A stretch of 61,952 bases of DNA, the filler included, from Choristocarpus tenellus KU-1152 (taxonomy: Eukaryota > Protista > Phaeophyceae): NCBI GenBank assembly GCA_964200185.2. It is 9 parts of 9 records of this genome, joined end to end, with 100 filler letters (N's around TTAATTAATTAA, not from the genome) between each part and the next. Parts side by side here need not be neighbours in the genome. Positions count along the whole stretch, not along the records: positions 41,373 to 45,700 come from CAXNAD020015105.1; 8 more parts are not named here. The stretch is one strand, 5' to 3'. Below, piece by piece: positions 6,101-45,700 of this stretch. How positions within the stretch are numbered: the first letter of the stretch is position 1; every line of letters starts with the position of its first letter. The notes under the pieces were generated by a model that was not told the DNA's origin, made no database searches, and saw nothing but the letters and a program-made list of their open reading frames with translations. The translations under genes and the position numbers were made by a program.

Positions 6101-9100
6101 AGGCTGCACTTCTCAAACAGAAGGAAGAAATCAAGTATGCTAAATTTAAGGTAGATCTCTTGTCATCATGCCTATGGACAATGACCACACTACTGTTTGC
6201 TTGTGAGAACCAGACAGAGACTACTTATCCCTGTCCTGGACCTTGTGGAAGTATGTCATTTTCCACAATCCCCCCTCTATAACAAGTGAATGAATGCCAT
6301 TCTCGTGCAAGTTGTCTAAATAATGGCAGCGCGTCACCATGCTTGAGGAAAAGATTTGGTATGGTTACAGATAGGTATAACTAATATGAATCAGGTGGTT
6401 TCTTTCCTACGCAACATTTCACGTCACTGTTCAGATTGGCGCAGACCTTTGAAAATATACGCAATTGCATAATCCCTTTTGACACGGATAAATATTAGGA
6501 AGTAAATTTTTTTTTAGTGGCTGAGTTGGGTACAGAAATATTTTCAACTTTCACACCAAAGACATATATATATATATATATATATATCAATACACTGCAC
6601 CAATGGTCACATCCATCTGACAATTTGCTCACCACTACATCTTTGGCATACACAGGGCTGGTTGCCTCAAGATGCATAGCCATAGACTCAGCAGTGGCAT
6701 TCCAGCTGATGCAGGCACTTTGATTTCCTCCTAGAGATATTACATAGCCCGGTTTCGTCTCAAACTTGTCGGATGCAGACAATGCCAGATCGTAGACCTT
6801 GATGACCTGACAATTTGTCGAGTTGGGTGGGCGAAGCCAGGTAGAGCGTAGGTGAGAAAATATTTCAATGCCGGTGAAAATGATGTATGGTTCCATGTCT
6901 AGCACATTGCTTTCAGGTGTGCATACAGCATTATAAATATATGATATACTTCACTTATGTAAAGTTTACGTCTTATTTCTATGTATATTGCTTGGTAGTC
7001 TGTGGATGAAGATCCACTTACAGAATTTAAGCATATCGGAGACGATATTAGTCATGACAGATGTCTCTATGGTACACCTCATACACCAGGCCAGAGGTGA
7101 TTCCTGCTTGAAAAAATTAATAAAATATTTCTCACTTTTTGGGATGATGACCAATTCAAGTAAGGCAACTCAGAATTTAGCTGTAACTAGTGATACTTCA
7201 AGAGAAACTGACAGATCAATTATAGACGGATACCAGGTCCCACAAATTCACACCCTTTCTTCTCACTTTCTCTTGACTAGAGATATATTATTGTTTCGTC
7301 GACACAGGAACAGCAAAGGTTCAGCGGTAGTGTTACGAATCAAATACTTTCTTCCATATACTTCAAAATAAGTCATGTTCAACTTAAAAACTTTCGATGT
7401 AGGTACAAGTGCAGGAATTGAGGCTTGCGAATCACTGAGGTCTGCAAATAAAGTATGCAGCGTGAATCCACCCCCAAAAAAAGAACATAAAAAATTTATC
7501 CCTCAATTTTCGATTTCAATATTGTGAATTGAACCTTATCACAGTGACAGAATTGTTGCAATTAGTATCTCCACTCAGTGGTCAGTTCCAAAGTTTTTTC
7601 ACACTGTTATGACCTCACAACTTTTGGTGTGATCACTTCCCTCTTTAAATGAGGAACAACTACATGTTTTAACCCACCTGAACCTCTGGGACACCAGGTG
7701 GCCTTGTGGAGTTATTTGAGGCGTCAAGTACTGTAATCGTGCCGTGTGAAGAGTCTCCATCGCCGTAGACCACGTTGCGAGTACTGGTGCCAAACAATAT
7801 CGATGCATCAGCCTGTGTTGAGTTGAGCTTAGGTACATTTCCCGGGGAGTTGCACAGACTGTCGTCACTACCTGTCTGCTGGCATGGGGTGTCTGCATCC
7901 CGTAAAAATGTAATTAGCCAGGAATAGCCCCCATTGTTCCCCCCAAGGTTTACTGCATTGCGACTGACTTCAACATCACCAACACAATCTGTTGCCTCAA
8001 GTATTTCCTCAACAGAGTTGCCATCTCCGTTGGACTCCTCGGCTGTAGCCCAGGCATTATGAGCAATGGATCCCGTAGTACATTCTGCATCTGCCATCAT
8101 GACCAAATGGCCACGGGTATCCAAAGTTAAGGTGAAGTAACCGCCCAAGGGGTTGGTACCATCTTGAATGGATGTGACCTGTCAACGTTTGAATCAGCAG
8201 TCATAGAAAGAGGTCTTCTTGGAGCAATTCTTGTTGTCTCAAGCCACGTGATGTATTGAGTGGAAAGTTGGTGCATGATCTGATGCTGAAATATATCGAC
8301 TTTTTTGTTACAAAGCTGTCTCTGCTTGAAGCTAGCCCTGATGTTGCTTATTGTTCTTCAAATTTGGAAAACGTTCCGTGTAGTTTCGAAGCACATTATA
8401 AAATCTAGTTCGGGACAACTTAACATGCAAATTTGTTCATAGCTTGCATATTTATCGGAATTCATGAGATCGTTCTGATGAACCTTCATAGCCTGCGTAT
8501 CAATACCTTAGAGGTGAGGAGCTTTCTTTCTGAAGAGAAAAAAACAGCAGAGAAAATTGACTGTTTCACGACAAATAATCTCGCTGACTGGAGCATATCT
8601 CGAAATACACGGTATTGTCAGTGTTCTTGTCGTGAGTAGTATATCCCCAAAATTAATGTTCTGGAGTGCTCTAATGCCTAAAGAACAAGAGCAACTATCT
8701 CCTCAAAAGTATGCAACAATACAAGTACATGCTTTGAAATATGTCTTGTAGAGCCTATACCTTGCAATCCTCCGATCCATCTCCTCTGGACGTGCCAAGG
8801 CCATCACTGGAGCAGTCCATATCAAGGAGGAATCCAACATTCTTCCCCCAGGACTTTGAGAAGCGGCCTTGTCCCGTGGATGGCCAAGTATCTTCCCAAC
8901 TAGCTGAAACTCCTTCCCAGTTACCGTCAATATATGATTCAGAGGCAGAGTGGTCTGTGGGATTGTGCCAAATGTTTGAGTCAAAAACAATAGTCCAAGT
9001 ATAGCCACCAACCTGCTGCTTACGATCCAATGTTTCCTCTGACCGTGTGACATCCACTTGAGAAGGGTAGATGCTTGAGAGGGAGTTGAGGGCTGACTGA

Positions 9101-41372: not shown

Positions 41373-41377
41373 ATTAC

Positions 41378-44300
41378 ATGCTCCTTAAACTTATTCCTGC
41401 AACGGGTGGGGGTAACACCTCCCACATGGCTAGGAGCTGTAGTGGAGGTGAACGACCTTCGGGGTCGTTCACTGGTGCTGTACTCAGACTGCATGAACAC
41501 CCAATATCATGCACATGTGTTACATATTGTGGGGAAAAAGGGGGTGGGATGAATAGGATCTCATGCAGTGTTCCATGGCAAGGGGATGAAGCTGAGGGAA
41601 CTGTCTTTAAAAAAACACGAAGACTTACGTCAGGCCAGGCAGTAAACTACCCTAGCCCCGTTGAAACACCTAACAGCCCTGGATGAACTCTCTTTAAAAA
41701 TATTGGTACAAGTTTGGTCGGCAGATGGTCCCTGATGAGAAGTCTGGAGACTATGGACCAGAACTGTTGAAAAATGTTGGAATAAGACTGGCCTTTGGAC
41801 TGACCCTGTTGAAATGTCCAATGGCCCTGGACCAGCCCTGTCAAAAAATATTGGTCCAAGTTCGACCCAAAAAAAGAATACTTACATTTACCTGACTCAA
41901 TGGAAAACCCTCTACAATTCATGTATTGCATGTAATTGATCATAAACACCCAACAATTGCTGCTGTAGTAGGTAGGACAGCTTACCAAGACCAGTGGGAT
42001 TACAACTAACCATATTTTATTTTCAAAAAACATCACTTCAACTTATCCTCATCAATATCCATGCCCACCTCCAACCAAGCCATTGAAAGCAATTGGGATA
42101 GACCACTAAGTATAAATCTCTTGCACAAGCAATCCATCATACATCCCAAAGATGCAAAGGACATACCCATCAAAGCAGCATATATCCAAAATAACATTTG
42201 AGCATTTTGAGAGCTAATCCTACTGTAGCCAAAAGCAAAAAGTAAAGATATTCCCAACAGGGCAAAACATTTGAGCCAACCTATGACTGTTTAACCAATT
42301 AAATAACCCCCTGGATCGATACTAAACATCATATTTCCAAGAGGAGGCATAGAAAAAACAGCAAATGCAAATATAGCAGTAATAGCAGACCTGCACTCAT
42401 TATTTGGTGTATTATTAAGAAATATTTTCTTAATCCATCATCATAAGCTGCTTTAGATCATACGGAGAAAAAAATAGATGATCATCAACTAATCTGCACT
42501 AAACTGCAACTTCCTCATAAAGACACCTCACTAGCATCTGAACCCATCAGCATTACCCTCAACCTAACCTATACATTCCCTATCTAATCGATCAGTCCAC
42601 CTGAGCCCTCACCTGCCCCCATCCCCTCCCATCCTCTTCGGCAATATTGTGTTCCATATGCCAACGCATGTCCTCCTCATCCCACAGCTGTCGATATGGC
42701 CGACCCAAAGACACTACCGGAGCCCTTGCCTTGGAGTCAGGGATGAGGCCCTTGAGGGCTGTTGTTTTCAGTGCCAGGGTTAGCCCCCGGGTCAAGAAAT
42801 GTAAAGTTCATGGTCCAGTGGCCAATCCCAAAGCCGGTCCAGGGTCATCAACCACGAAGGGTAAATAGTTTGTGTGTTAAGATGATAATATTGCTGAATT
42901 TTTGTTCGACAAATTCACAATTTTATCAGGGTTAGGATTATAAGTGGGATGGGGCGTGGTGCTGAACCAGGCACTACATGGAATTGTCTCAGTTGTGGGG
43001 ATCTCCACCAATATCACAACTAGCCAAATTCAAATCCTTGACCCTAGAGTAACAGGACAAAGGAAAATAGTGGGGGGGGGTTGAGAACATTAGAAGCAAT
43101 TTTCTTCTGCCCCATAAGGTACTCTAAGAAAAACAGAAACACCTTGTCCCTCCATCATCCCCCTCGCCCTTCTATGTCCTACTCCGTATGAATATCTACA
43201 CTACCTATCAGTAAAACAGACAAAATTCCATTGAGTCTACTCACCCTCAACAAACTCATCGGGCTCCATGAGAGGATGCAGCCAACTTCCCTGATGCTGG
43301 TCCTGCATCAACACAATGGTGCCAAAGCAAGACACATAGAGGAGTGCTGAGCAAAATGGCAAACAGATGGGTGCAAGCAGGGCCTGATGCAACAGAATTT
43401 CCTGTTACGTCTACTGGGGCGAGACTGTTTTTTTTTATGCATAGCTGTGTGGTAGGCACATGCTAAAGGAAACAGGGTATTGGAGGGGGGGTAAGGAACA
43501 CAGGATCAAAGAAGAAGAGGAAAAAGAAATGAGAACCAAAAACACTTTCCAGGAAATGCATACTTCAATCTGCAGACATACATATATATGTATGCAAAGG
43601 GTACAATTGTTGAAAGGAATACAACTCGCCATGGAGAGTACAGAGTATGAAGAAAAAAAAAGGAAAATGGAGTGTGATCTGCTAGTCTGCAAAAGCTTTC
43701 AGTTCAAAAACAAAAAACTTCAAGCAAACTGCCTCCATCCCCCCATCCTTTGTCCCTGTAAGCACCACAAGCCTGCACCCTGATTTCATCTAGCTCACCA
43801 GTAACTCCCTTGCCAACTTCTCAGGAATGTCCCATTGACTGAGTGTTGTCTTCTGTATTGTGTTGAGGAGTTTCTCATCCGTATGACCCAAATCCTTGAA
43901 GGCATCAGCAGCATGCTTGTTCCACAGATAAGCCAGATCTGGGTCGCCATGGACTTCAGCCTTTAGGGTAAGAGTGCAAGTGTGAGTTGGCAGGGGGGGG
44001 ATAAAAGGAAGTGGTTGAGGTGTGCCTGAAGATGCAAGGTGGGAAAACTAGGTGAGGGAAGCAGTGAAGTCAGGGATACAGAAGGTGAAAGTGGCACCGT
44101 CAATGGGTACTTGTGAGGTCGCGGGCAGGGGATGGAGGCAGGGATACGATCAAGAGTAGAGCAGAAGGAAATTATTACATGCATTTGGTATCACCAGTAC
44201 GATGAGATGCACTGTCAATGTGGAAACAGTGGGACTGGGGGGGGAAAGTTTGGGGGAGTAGGAGCGTCAAGTGTGGCATTCCAATTTAAATGCCAACACA

Positions 44301-45291
44301 GGAGCGATATCTGATTGGTGTACGCATAGGCATGGTGGCCCCATCAGGGTTGAAAACATGGCCTGCAGAGTAAATATAGGGGTGTGATATTGAGGCGCGT
44401 CAGTCCACAGACAGTGGTGACTAGGGTGGGCCAGGCTTACCAGCAGAAGCGGCCGAGGAATGGAGAGAGCATTCATGGTGATGGCGGAGGTGGAGCCATA
44501 ATGGTAAGATGAGTATATGCTTACGTGACTCATGTCGGAATGATATCGGTAAGCAAATTCGGAAAAACGATTCCAGGATGCAAGGCCCAAGACTTCGGGA
44601 CCCGTCTGTGTCAAGCCATGACCACTGTGTGCCGTGCAAGGCGATGGAAAGTGACATAGAGGTAAAATTTAAGAAAAGTAGTATATTAGGGGAGAAAGCT
44701 TACCACCATGTGCGACATAAGGGCGAAAGAACTCAATACGTATCCACGACAGGGTCTAACAAGAATGCGGGCAATGCAACCCCCCTTATTATGTGTCATG
44801 CGTGTAGATTATAGGATCGAAGAGGAATTCGCATGGATCTCCAACAAATTAGACTATACATCTAAGTGAGGGATATCTGCAAGGGAGACGAGAGTGGTGG
44901 CAAGACGGCTTACCACTGGCTCATCTTCATCTTGACTCGAGTCGTCCGGTCGTTTGCGGCGTCCTCTTGGAGTCTTCCCCCTCCCAAGCCCGACCGTAGC
45001 CTTTCCAGAGTCACCCCCTTTCCTATTACTCACCTCCTCCCCACCACTTTCCTTCCCTCCACTACTCTTGATTCTTCCTCTCAATCGCCTCTTCCCCCTG
45101 GTATTGAACCTACGGCCCTTCGCTCTACCCCTGCCGCCTTTTGGCACGGCAATTGCCACAGAGCCACCACATGATGAAGTTGAATCCACAGTCACTGCTT
45201 CCTTTACTTTTCCCTGGTCTAGAGTTCCGAGATTGTCCTTGACGTCTAGGGATCCTGTGACTTCGCGGTTTTCACCTCTTGGGGGGTCCAT
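41378..45291 (-). CDS. Unidentified multi-exon protein-coding gene (partial); basic/Gly-rich low-complexity N-terminal part
   Basis: Phase-consistent GT-AG exons 44914-~45291, 44525-44605, 43799-43960, 43245-43302, 42613-42758 and a tentative 41378-41488. They encode TGPEVLGLASWNRFSEFAYRYHSDMSHAEVHGDPDLAYLWNKHAADAFKDLG...WDIPEKLARELLDQHQGSWLHPLMEPDEFVEALKGLIP... Confidence 0.6.
42144..42476 (-). pseudogene. yccA: Bacterial (Rickettsiales-like) Bax inhibitor-1/YccA family gene fragment, 5' part, with a frameshift and a stop
   Basis: Reads SKAAYDDGLRKYFLIIHQIMSAGL[fs]AITAIFAFAVFSMPPLGNMMFSIDPGGYLIG*TVIGWLKCFALLGISLLFAFGYSRISSQNAQMLFWIYAALMGMSFASLG. This matches the alphaproteobacterial YccA pattern 'DxGLRxYxLxVYxYM...FAPLGI...AQxLFWxYAxLxGxS'. 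It is AT-rich and intronless. Confidence 0.8.
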
Positions 45292-45700
45292 TTTGACCCG
45301 ATGATCCCCTCAATGACCCCCTAAGTTCTCGGTATCTCGGTGGCCTCTCCTCTTCCAATCCTCGTCCAATTAGCAAAAGATGGGACGTTAGTAATCCCAG
45401 GCTGAAGATGTGTATATAGAGGTTGTTGGTGGTTAGGTGATGGGAACAGGGACACTCCCCTTCCGCCTTCCAACCTTTTCAGTTTCTACTTTAGACTATA
45501 GAGAAGATTAAGTCTCTTGATCAGATCATGCCTCATCGCATCATAACTTAAATATTTACTTATCAATATACTAATTTTTGTCGAATACTTGTTCATATTT
45601 TTCCATCATATTTAAACAAAAAATCACCATGTTCAATACATAGATATATGGTAGGAAAGGAGTAGTTAAATCCAGACTACGCCAAATTGTTTCGGTGACT

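What the first reader, a model, noticed from the sequence alone, without database searches (positions are those of the whole stretch)
42144..42476. Decayed Rickettsiales-like yccA fragment embedded in eukaryotic DNA: likely endosymbiont-to-nucleus transfer
Seen: ~330 bp of AT-rich, intronless sequence encodes the N-terminal part of a bacterial BI-1/YccA protein, with one frameshift and one stop. It lies within one contig, between spliceosomal exon 42613-42758 and a tentative exon 41378-41488. Established: these motifs are typical of alphaproteobacterial, especially Rickettsiaceae, YccA, and some Rickettsiales (e.g. 'Ca. Megaira') live inside algae. Inference: this is a molecular fossil of a past intracellular infection. 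The decay and the eukaryotic flanks argue against simple contamination.
Basis: partly seen in the sequence, partly recalled or inferred. Interest (0 to 1): 0.8.

Follow-up and report, generated by a model that had tools for sequence, protein, structure and literature searches.

The report
Dead rickettsial yccA fragment in intron
A 313-base broken piece of a membrane-protein gene (yccA) from a Rickettsia-family bacterium sits inside an intron of an expressed eukaryotic gene; it is a genuine but small and non-functional trace of contact with an intracellular bacterium, of a kind already known from other hosts.

Summary
On the minus strand, 42457..42144 encodes residues about 15-116 of a 247-residue bacterial Bax inhibitor-1/YccA protein. 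The best relative is 72% identical over 78 residues (tblastn E 1e-32) and 72% at DNA level over 306 bases. The copy is broken by a one-base deletion (42387-42388) and a TAA stop (42291-42293), has no start codon and lacks the C-terminal half.

An exhaustive search of 1.84 billion proteins returned only YccA-type hits. Two trees place the fragment, with starred support, in a clade otherwise made of Rickettsiaceae bins, one misbinned contig and unnamed metagenome proteins. That clade is sister to chromosomal Rickettsiaceae yccA.

Its closest relatives lie on contigs that look like Rickettsiales plasmids or conjugative elements.

The eukaryotic setting is also real. A spliced transcript contig joins five exons with GT..AG introns, and the fragment lies in the 1124-base intron 41489-42612. 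Contigs from a second DNA sample bridge both edges at host-like depth.

Best reading: a fossil of bacterial DNA integrated into nuclear DNA, spliced out and without function. It is a new member of a known kind. The host organism and the age of the insert could not be determined.

The parts
42144..42457 (-). Truncated yccA (Bax inhibitor-1/YccA family) pseudogene fragment, matching residues about 15-116 of a 247-residue protein. GC is 35.1%.
   Evidence: tblastn and blastn; phmmer; trees; GC.
42387..42388 (-). Frameshift. Only two bases (CT) remain of the Leu codon between the motifs ..MSAG and AITAI.., so one base was deleted.
   Evidence: Frame switch located against homologues.
42291..42293 (-). 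In-frame TAA stop at a position where homologues have Met or Leu.
   Evidence: Translation and alignment.
41489..42612 (-). Host intron of 1124 bases with GT..AG ends. It contains the fragment in sense orientation.
   Evidence: Joint 41488/42613 in the spliced contig of run X3.
41871..42143 (.). AT-rich flank (36.5% GC) next to the fragment, of unknown origin. It is not the missing C-terminal half of yccA.
   Evidence: Local alignment no better than shuffles; no tblastx, Pfam or plasmid match.
42458..42560 (.). AT-rich flank (39.8% GC) on the 5' side of the fragment, of unknown origin.
42613..42758 (-). Host exon 4.
   Evidence: Spliced contig record 17 of X3. Its frame is continuous with exons 3 and 5 (coordinate arithmetic on the frames).
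41373..41488 (-). Host exon 5. It runs off the end of the piece.
   Evidence: Spliced contig.
43245..43301 (-). Host exon 3.
   Evidence: Spliced contig.
43798..43959 (-). Host exon 2.
   Evidence: Spliced contig.
44913..45444 (-). Host exon 1, with the 5' UTR. The likely ATG is at 45291.
   Evidence: Spliced contig; ORF list.

Best explanation
A short piece of DNA from a bacterium of the family Rickettsiaceae became integrated into the nuclear DNA of a eukaryote, inside an intron of an expressed protein-coding gene. The donor DNA was most likely a plasmid or an integrative conjugative element carrying a yccA copy. Only 313 bases of yccA are recognisable. The piece is cut off at both ends and carries a one-base deletion and a stop codon.

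It is removed with the intron and has no function: it is a molecular fossil.

Shown: the bacterial ancestry, the lesions, the intronic position, the linkage to host exons and the single-copy-like depth.

Inferred: the route (DNA released from an intracellular bacterium and joined into a chromosome break), the plasmid or element origin of the donor DNA, and that the event is not very old.
For: Identity and significance:
- The best of 1.84 billion proteins are YccA-type proteins at 64-70% identity.
- Those with a source name are called 'FtsH-binding integral membrane protein' or 'Bax inhibitor-1/YccA family protein'.

Lineage:
- Near-identical copies of the best hit lie in two Rickettsiaceae bins.
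- The fragment sits in an 11-row clade with support 100/97*. This lies inside a 25-row Rickettsiaceae clade (100/100*). In the focused tree it is sister to the chromosomal Rickettsiaceae copies (99/98*).

Donor context:
- The relatives' contigs carry ProQ, HU, a cold-shock protein, SemiSWEET, Rpn nuclease/transposase, TraD, ParA, resolvase and Tn3.
- These neighbours are 57-76% identical to genes on 'Ca. Megaera polyxenophila', Rickettsia rhipicephali and 'Ca. Bandiella' plasmids, which also carry yccA.

Pseudogene state:
- Frameshift, stop, no start codon, and no C-terminal half.
- 3 of 17 invariant columns are changed, against 0-2 in intact members.

Nuclear setting:
- A spliced contig has four GT..AG joints. 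No contig of the transcript run X3 was laid between 41518 and 42532.
- X1 has one contig across the whole piece.
- X2 contigs 41984-42307 and 42287-43079 bridge both edges with no differences. Their depth is 5.5-7.9, against 5.8-8.4 for the flanks.

Composition:
- The fragment is 35.1% GC, like the relatives' genes (33.7-36.8%). Host exons are 48-58% and the other introns 43-49%.
Against: - All three runs come from one study, and X1 may be the sample the window was assembled from. Independence is therefore limited.
- In X2 the contigs 41373-41986 and 41984-42307 overlap by only 3 bases, so the link to exon 5 rests on X1.
- The family label of the closest relatives rests on metagenome binning of short contigs, and one near-identical contig sits in a Saccharibacteria bin.
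- No relative above 71% protein identity was found, so the donor itself is unsampled.
- Contigs cannot prove absence from RNA.
- The 270 and 100 bases of AT-rich flank are unexplained.
Confidence: 0.85

Rival explanations
1. The fragment is a partial duplicate of a full-length yccA gene that this eukaryote acquired from Rickettsiaceae and keeps, perhaps in use, elsewhere in its genome. On this reading it is not a direct insert of bacterial DNA.
For: Only this 4.3-kb piece could be examined. The differences from relatives by codon position (0.25/0.16/0.50) look like those between working genes, so the sequence spent most of its history under selection.
Against: No second copy at 95% or more was laid in X1 or X2: depth over the fragment equals one contig. 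GC is still donor-like at 35%, whereas host exons are 48-58%. The codon-position pattern is equally explained by divergence among bacteria before the transfer.
Confidence: 0.08
2. Assembly chimera or contamination: bacterial reads were wrongly joined to a eukaryotic contig.
For: The assembly is fragmentary. All runs are from one study. Rickettsiales DNA often accompanies protist and algal samples.
Against: A real bacterial contaminant would give an intact gene with bacterial neighbours. Here the gene is truncated at both ends, frameshifted and stopped, and nothing else in the piece matches bacterial flanks. Two samples give the same joins with no differences, at host depth. Both sides are exons of one spliced transcript.
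Confidence: 0.04
3. The fragment is functional in the host, for example as an alternative exon, a small membrane peptide or a regulatory element in the intron.
For: It lies in the same orientation as the host gene. GT-type donor-like sites exist inside the intron, at 42531 and 41985.
Against: The longest stop-free piece has no start codon of its own in the homologous part. The reading frame is broken twice. No transcript contig covers it. Three invariant residues are replaced.
Confidence: 0.02
4. It is a decayed copy of the eukaryote's own BI-1/TMBIM/GHITM-type gene, or a chance similarity.
For: The family also exists in eukaryotes, and the Pfam match alone is weak.
Against: E-values are 1e-12 to 1e-39. 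Identity to alphaproteobacterial YccA is 70%, including the YD[ED]GLR motif. The only eukaryote-labelled protein among the hits with E up to 0.001 is one insect entry that is itself flanked by IS110 transposase sequence.
Confidence: 0.01

Closest known systems
[quoted passage not shown] 2015, PMC4324946)
   Same: Rickettsiaceae DNA in the nuclear genome of a eukaryote, taken as evidence of an earlier endosymbiont.
   Different: The Volvox case is about 9 kb with regions similar to four rickettsial genes. This one is a single 313-base piece of one gene in an intron. It is related to plasmid-like copies, and the host is not identified.
Wolbachia-derived nuclear inserts in arthropods and nematodes (reviewed in PMC5541319; filarial 'ghosts' in PMC12693587)
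   Same: Mostly neutrally decaying fossils of an intracellular Rickettsiales bacterium embedded in host chromosomes.
   Different: The donor family is Rickettsiaceae, not Anaplasmataceae. The size is at the small end. No series of inserts has been shown here.
Plasmid-borne yccA of Rickettsiales: 'Ca. Megaira' endosymbiont of Mesostigma viride pMegNEIS296, 'Ca. Megaera polyxenophila' pPCS201, Rickettsia rhipicephali pHJ51, 'Ca. Bandiella numerosa' plasmid
   Same: Same gene family in the same kind of mobile context: ProQ, HU, SemiSWEET, Rpn, TraD, ParB, resolvase.
   Different: These are only about 50-54% identical to the fragment's closest relative. The Megaira and Bandiella copies fall outside the clade that holds the fragment, and the Rickettsia rhipicephali copy groups with the chromosomal Rickettsiaceae copies rather than with it.
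YccA / BsYetJ, bacterial TMBIM proteins. By established knowledge these are seven-helix membrane proteins; E. coli YccA modulates the FtsH protease.
   Same: The fragment derives from this family and covers roughly the first three transmembrane helices.
   Different: It lacks the C-terminal half, where the family's conserved pH-sensing aspartates lie, so it cannot work like them.

Membership tests
Bax inhibitor-1/YccA family (Pfam PF01027) | Significant sequence match to family members. | tested here: met
   Phmmer E 1e-12 and tblastn E 1e-32 to proteins whose precomputed Pfam domain is Bax1-I. The direct Pfam scan gives only 18.4 bits against a cut-off of 34.1, because the stop-free piece is short.
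Bax inhibitor-1/YccA family (Pfam PF01027) | Complete protein of about 230-250 residues with seven helices, including the conserved C-terminal half. | tested here: not met
   Only residues about 15-116 are present. Downstream DNA does not match the rest of the gene. Frameshift and stop. It is a fragment of a member, not a working member.
Nuclear insert of bacterial DNA (lateral-transfer fossil) | Phylogenetic nesting inside a bacterial clade. | tested here: met
   Clades with support 100/97*, 100/100* and 99/98*.
Nuclear insert of bacterial DNA (lateral-transfer fossil) | Physical linkage to host sequence in sequence data beyond the assembly itself. | tested here: met
   The X1 contig spans the whole piece, and X2 contigs bridge both edges of the block. 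Caveats: one study, contigs rather than raw reads, and only a 3-base overlap at 41984-41986 in X2.
Nuclear insert of bacterial DNA (lateral-transfer fossil) | Flanks are genuine eukaryotic genes. | tested here: met
   A spliced contig has four GT..AG joints and one open frame across five exons (frame arithmetic).
Nuclear insert of bacterial DNA (lateral-transfer fossil) | Copy number like the host genome, not like a bacterium. | tested here: met
   Equal contig depth over fragment and flanks in X1 (15.3) and X2 (5.5-8.4). Contig depth is a coarse measure.
Nuclear insert of bacterial DNA (lateral-transfer fossil) | Empty site in related species or strains, which would give the polarity and age of the insertion. 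| not testable with these tools
Rickettsiales plasmid / conjugative-element cargo (donor context) | Donor gene flanked by plasmid or conjugative-element genes. | tested here: inconclusive
   This holds for the closest relatives. The insert itself keeps no flanking bacterial DNA, so the donor's own context is inferred.

The most novel reading that the evidence does not exclude
The fragment is the visible tip of a larger, fairly recent influx of plasmid or conjugative-element DNA from an unsampled freshwater Rickettsiaceae lineage into this host's nucleus. That would mark a host lineage with an undescribed current or recent rickettsial symbiont. It would also suggest that symbiont plasmids, not chromosomes, are the preferred donors of such nuclear inserts.
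Probability: 0.25. Interest if true: 0.55.

Novelty: new member of a known kind. Interest (0 to 1): 0.4.

Why it matters
The fragment is a clean example of bacterial DNA fixed in a eukaryotic intron, backed by transcript and junction evidence. It records contact between this host and a Rickettsiaceae lineage that public data do not hold at more than about 71% protein identity.

Such fossils help to map the past host range of Rickettsiales in microbial eukaryotes. They can also be mistaken for contamination, or used wrongly as evidence of it. The link to plasmid-like donor contexts is a small new point. A single 313-base dead fragment does not change any general picture.

Tried and rejected
- **Rest of the gene or bacterial neighbours in the intron or the piece.** tblastx and blastn against the closest bacterial loci, and local alignments against shuffles, found nothing beyond 42144-42457. 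I had suspected by eye a weak continuation into the C-terminal half in another frame; this was not supported.
The N-terminal extension is not supported.
- **The 131-residue ORF 41650-42042 (-) in the AT-rich flank.** No Pfam, NCBIfam or plasmid match.
- **Solved structures.** No hit for the 85-residue piece.
- **Host gene function.** No Pfam hit on any exon-bearing piece, and the ESM Atlas gave only scores of 0.80 or less.
- **Word-index protein search.** Not used for the host gene. Its length window (0.55-1.75 times the query) cannot reach a protein of at least 286 residues from single exons.
- **Joined spliced model.** Only the exon phases were checked, by arithmetic.
- **Rfam, tRNA and tandem-repeat scans.** Nothing relevant.
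- **DNA-level search of plasmids.** No match; it is too insensitive at 72% identity.
- **Closer donor in metagenome contigs.** None above 71%.

Full report
**What is in the sequence**

Translating the minus strand of 41950-42560 in three frames gives three collinear pieces.
- A piece ending in ..YDDGLRKYF..MSAG, in one frame (from 42457).
- After a shift of one base, a piece beginning AITAI.. and ending ..GGYLIG.
- After a TAA at 42291-42293, an 85-residue stop-free piece (window:42036-42290:-). Only its first 49 residues, down to 42144, belong to the similarity.

At the frame switch only two bases (CT, 42388-42387) stand where all relatives have a Leu codon, so one base was deleted. An in-frame stop stands directly upstream of 42457, and there is no start codon.

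**Is it more than chance, and what is it?**

- Pfam sees Bax1-I only weakly: E 0.002 and 18.4 bits against a cut-off of 34.1. NCBIfam and the solved structures see nothing. This is expected for so short a piece.
- The exhaustive phmmer search of 1.84 billion representatives gave 14 hits. The best was E 1.1e-12 with 70% identity over 53 residues to a 247-residue protein, P0001.
- All hits carry the alphaproteobacterial YccA N-terminal motif. Where sources name them, the names are 'FtsH-binding integral membrane protein' or 'Bax inhibitor-1/YccA family protein'.
- Tblastn of P0001 on the piece gives 72% identity over 78 residues plus 48% over 29 residues (joint E 1e-32), covering residues 15-116.
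- At DNA level the block 42145-42446 is 72% identical to the gene in three genome bins, E 2e-39.
- Homology stops sharply at 42144. The next 270 bases, and the 150 bases on the other side, align no better than shuffled sequence to the rest of the bacterial gene or to its neighbours.
- No other part of the 4.3-kb piece matches the bacterial loci.

The object is therefore a 313-base internal piece of yccA, truncated at both ends.

**Which bacteria?**

- A scan of one genome per species found copies 98% identical to P0001 in two bins labelled Rickettsiaceae, from freshwater lakes. One 89% copy lies in a bin labelled Saccharibacteria, which is probably misbinned.
- The next tier, at 51-60% identity, is made up almost entirely of bins labelled Rickettsiaceae or Rickettsiales, plus 'Ca. 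Tisiphia' and Orientia. Two bins in this tier are labelled only Alphaproteobacteria. Other Alphaproteobacteria follow at 50% or less.
- For the trees, the window fragment was read through with X at the two breaks.
- The 89-row maximum-likelihood tree places the fragment in an 11-row clade (100/97*). That clade lies inside a 25-row clade holding all Rickettsiaceae rows (100/100*), which a long branch separates from all other Alphaproteobacteria.
- A focused 37-row tree, with four Rickettsiales plasmid copies added and rooted on other Alphaproteobacteria, gives the same 11-row clade (100/97*). It is sister to the chromosomal Rickettsiaceae copies (99/98*). The 'Ca. Megaira' and 'Ca. Bandiella' plasmid copies fall outside.
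- The position within the 11-row clade is unresolved.
- A metagenome scan found no relative above 71% identity. The donor is an unsampled member of this clade.

**A refinement: the relatives are on mobile DNA**

- The contigs that carry P0001 and P0023 hold ProQ, HU, a cold-shock protein, a SemiSWEET transporter, Rpn-type nuclease/transposases, TraD, type I restriction-modification subunits, GapR, ParA, resolvase, Tn3 transposase and group II intron reverse transcriptases.
- yccA is also carried on sequenced plasmids of Rickettsia rhipicephali, 'Ca. Megaera polyxenophila', the 'Ca. Megaira' endosymbiont of Mesostigma viride and 'Ca. Bandiella numerosa', in similar company.
- The neighbours of P0001 and P0023 are 57-76% identical to genes on those plasmids: HU 76% and 68%, ProQ 57%, Rpn 62%, SemiSWEET 60%, cold-shock protein 58%.
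- This supports the Rickettsiales assignment independently of binning. It also suggests that the donor DNA was a plasmid or conjugative element. That is an inference, because the insert keeps no bacterial flank.

**The eukaryotic setting**

Three public runs from one study hold the piece. Laying their contigs on it gave the following.
- Run X3 has a 1016-base contig at depth 142. It joins 45444-44913, 43959-43798, 43301-43245, 42758-42613 and 41488-41373. All four skipped parts have GT..AG ends on the minus strand, so this is a spliced transcript.
- By coordinate arithmetic on the frames, the five exons keep one open frame from the ATG at 45291, for at least 286 codons.
- The yccA piece lies in the fourth intron (41489-42612, 1124 bases), in the same orientation as the host gene.
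- No X3 contig was laid between 41518 and 42532. Contigs cannot prove absence.
- X1 has one 4624-base contig across the whole piece with no differences. It may be the source of the assembly.
- In X2, a different sample, contig 41984-42307 bridges the 42144 edge and contig 42287-43079 bridges the 42457 edge and runs through exon 4. Both show no differences, at depth 5.5-7.9 against 5.8-8.4 elsewhere.
- The X2 link to exon 5 is weaker, with only a 3-base overlap at 41984-41986.
- No further copy at 95% or more was laid.

The host gene has no Pfam or Atlas match.

**State and age**

- GC of the fragment is 35.1%, like the relatives' genes (33.7-36.8%). Host exons are 48-58% and the other three introns 43-49%.
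- An AT-rich zone of about 690 bases (41871-42560) is wider than the homologous block, and its extra parts are unexplained.
- Differences from the nearest relatives by codon position are 0.25/0.16/0.50. This is close to the 0.29/0.13/0.57 seen between two intact relatives at the same overall distance. Most of the divergence therefore arose under selection in bacteria, and neutral decay since integration is modest.
- Signs of decay do exist: the two lesions, and 3 of 17 columns invariant in 21 Rickettsiaceae-clade proteins changed (Y to H, P to L, L to F), against 0-2 in any intact member.
- No absolute date can be given.

**Mechanism**

Shown:
- bacterial ancestry;
- truncation and lesions;
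- intronic location and removal by splicing;
- host-like depth.

Inferred, from established knowledge of Wolbachia and Rickettsia nuclear inserts and of organelle-derived inserts: DNA released from an intracellular bacterium, or possibly from ingested prey, was captured during repair of a chromosome break. It persisted because an intron tolerates it.

**Comparison with what is known**

This is the same kind of object as the rickettsial sequences in the Volvox carteri nuclear genome (PMC4324946) and the Wolbachia fossils of arthropods and nematodes (PMC5541319, PMC12693587). It differs in being very small, in lying within a spliced intron with transcript proof, and in its affinity to mobile-element-borne yccA copies.

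**Verdict**

It is a new member of a known kind, of moderate to low interest (0.4). Interest would rise if a genome-wide screen shows many such pieces, or if the host belongs to a lineage not known to harbour Rickettsiales.

Noticed in passing
window 45646-45700: The last ~50 bases of the piece belong to an extremely abundant repeat. Summed contig depth is about 116,000 in X1 and 42,000 in X2, against 15 and 6 for the rest. Many contigs carry different sequence to the left of 45646-45657, several of them sharing a GGAGGGAGAGGAGCGGGAGG-like stretch. The contig probably ends here because of this repeat. No Rfam or tRNA match.
   Followed up: partly
window 41598-41862: Inside the same intron there is a local family of direct repeats: 59-base units at 41656-41714 and 41804-41862 (75% identical), and 22-base sub-repeats ending in CTGTTGAAA at 41751, 41793 and 41825. 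Origin unknown; they are not related to the yccA piece.
   Followed up: no
window 44441-44757 (minus strand): Open stretches ending at good GTAAGC donor sites (44703, 44440) look like exons, but the transcript contig skips them; it joins 44913 directly to 43959. They may be alternative exons or chance.
   Followed up: no
P0008 (KAJ6644989.1, Pseudolycoriella hygida, on a 192-Mb contig): This is a 453-residue 'hypothetical protein' of a fungus gnat. It consists of a YccA N-terminal part flanked on both sides by repeated IS110-type transposase sequence, and it groups with 'Ca. Tisiphia' (95/81*). It is probably another rickettsial insert or contaminant in a eukaryote assembly.
   Followed up: partly
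L009 (CAITDW010000104.1): A 4.4-kb contig with a yccA 89% identical to the Rickettsiaceae-bin copy is filed in a 'Candidatus Saccharibacteria' bin. This is probably a misbinned plasmid-like contig.
   Followed up: no
L092 and NZ_CP013134.1 1206-1349 (Rickettsia rhipicephali plasmid pHJ51): Two yccA-like stretches have no annotated gene in the PLSDB table. One, at 7631-8278, reads without a stop over the 216-residue match (about 87% of the protein); the other is a short piece at 1206-1349.
   Followed up: no
L001, L087-L089: A conserved gene string, ProQ - small ORF (68 residues) - HU - (other genes) - YccA, recurs on contigs from different metagenomes. It sits next to type I restriction-modification genes, TraD, GapR, ParA and resolvase. 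This looks like a widespread plasmid or conjugative-element backbone of freshwater Rickettsiaceae.
   Followed up: partly
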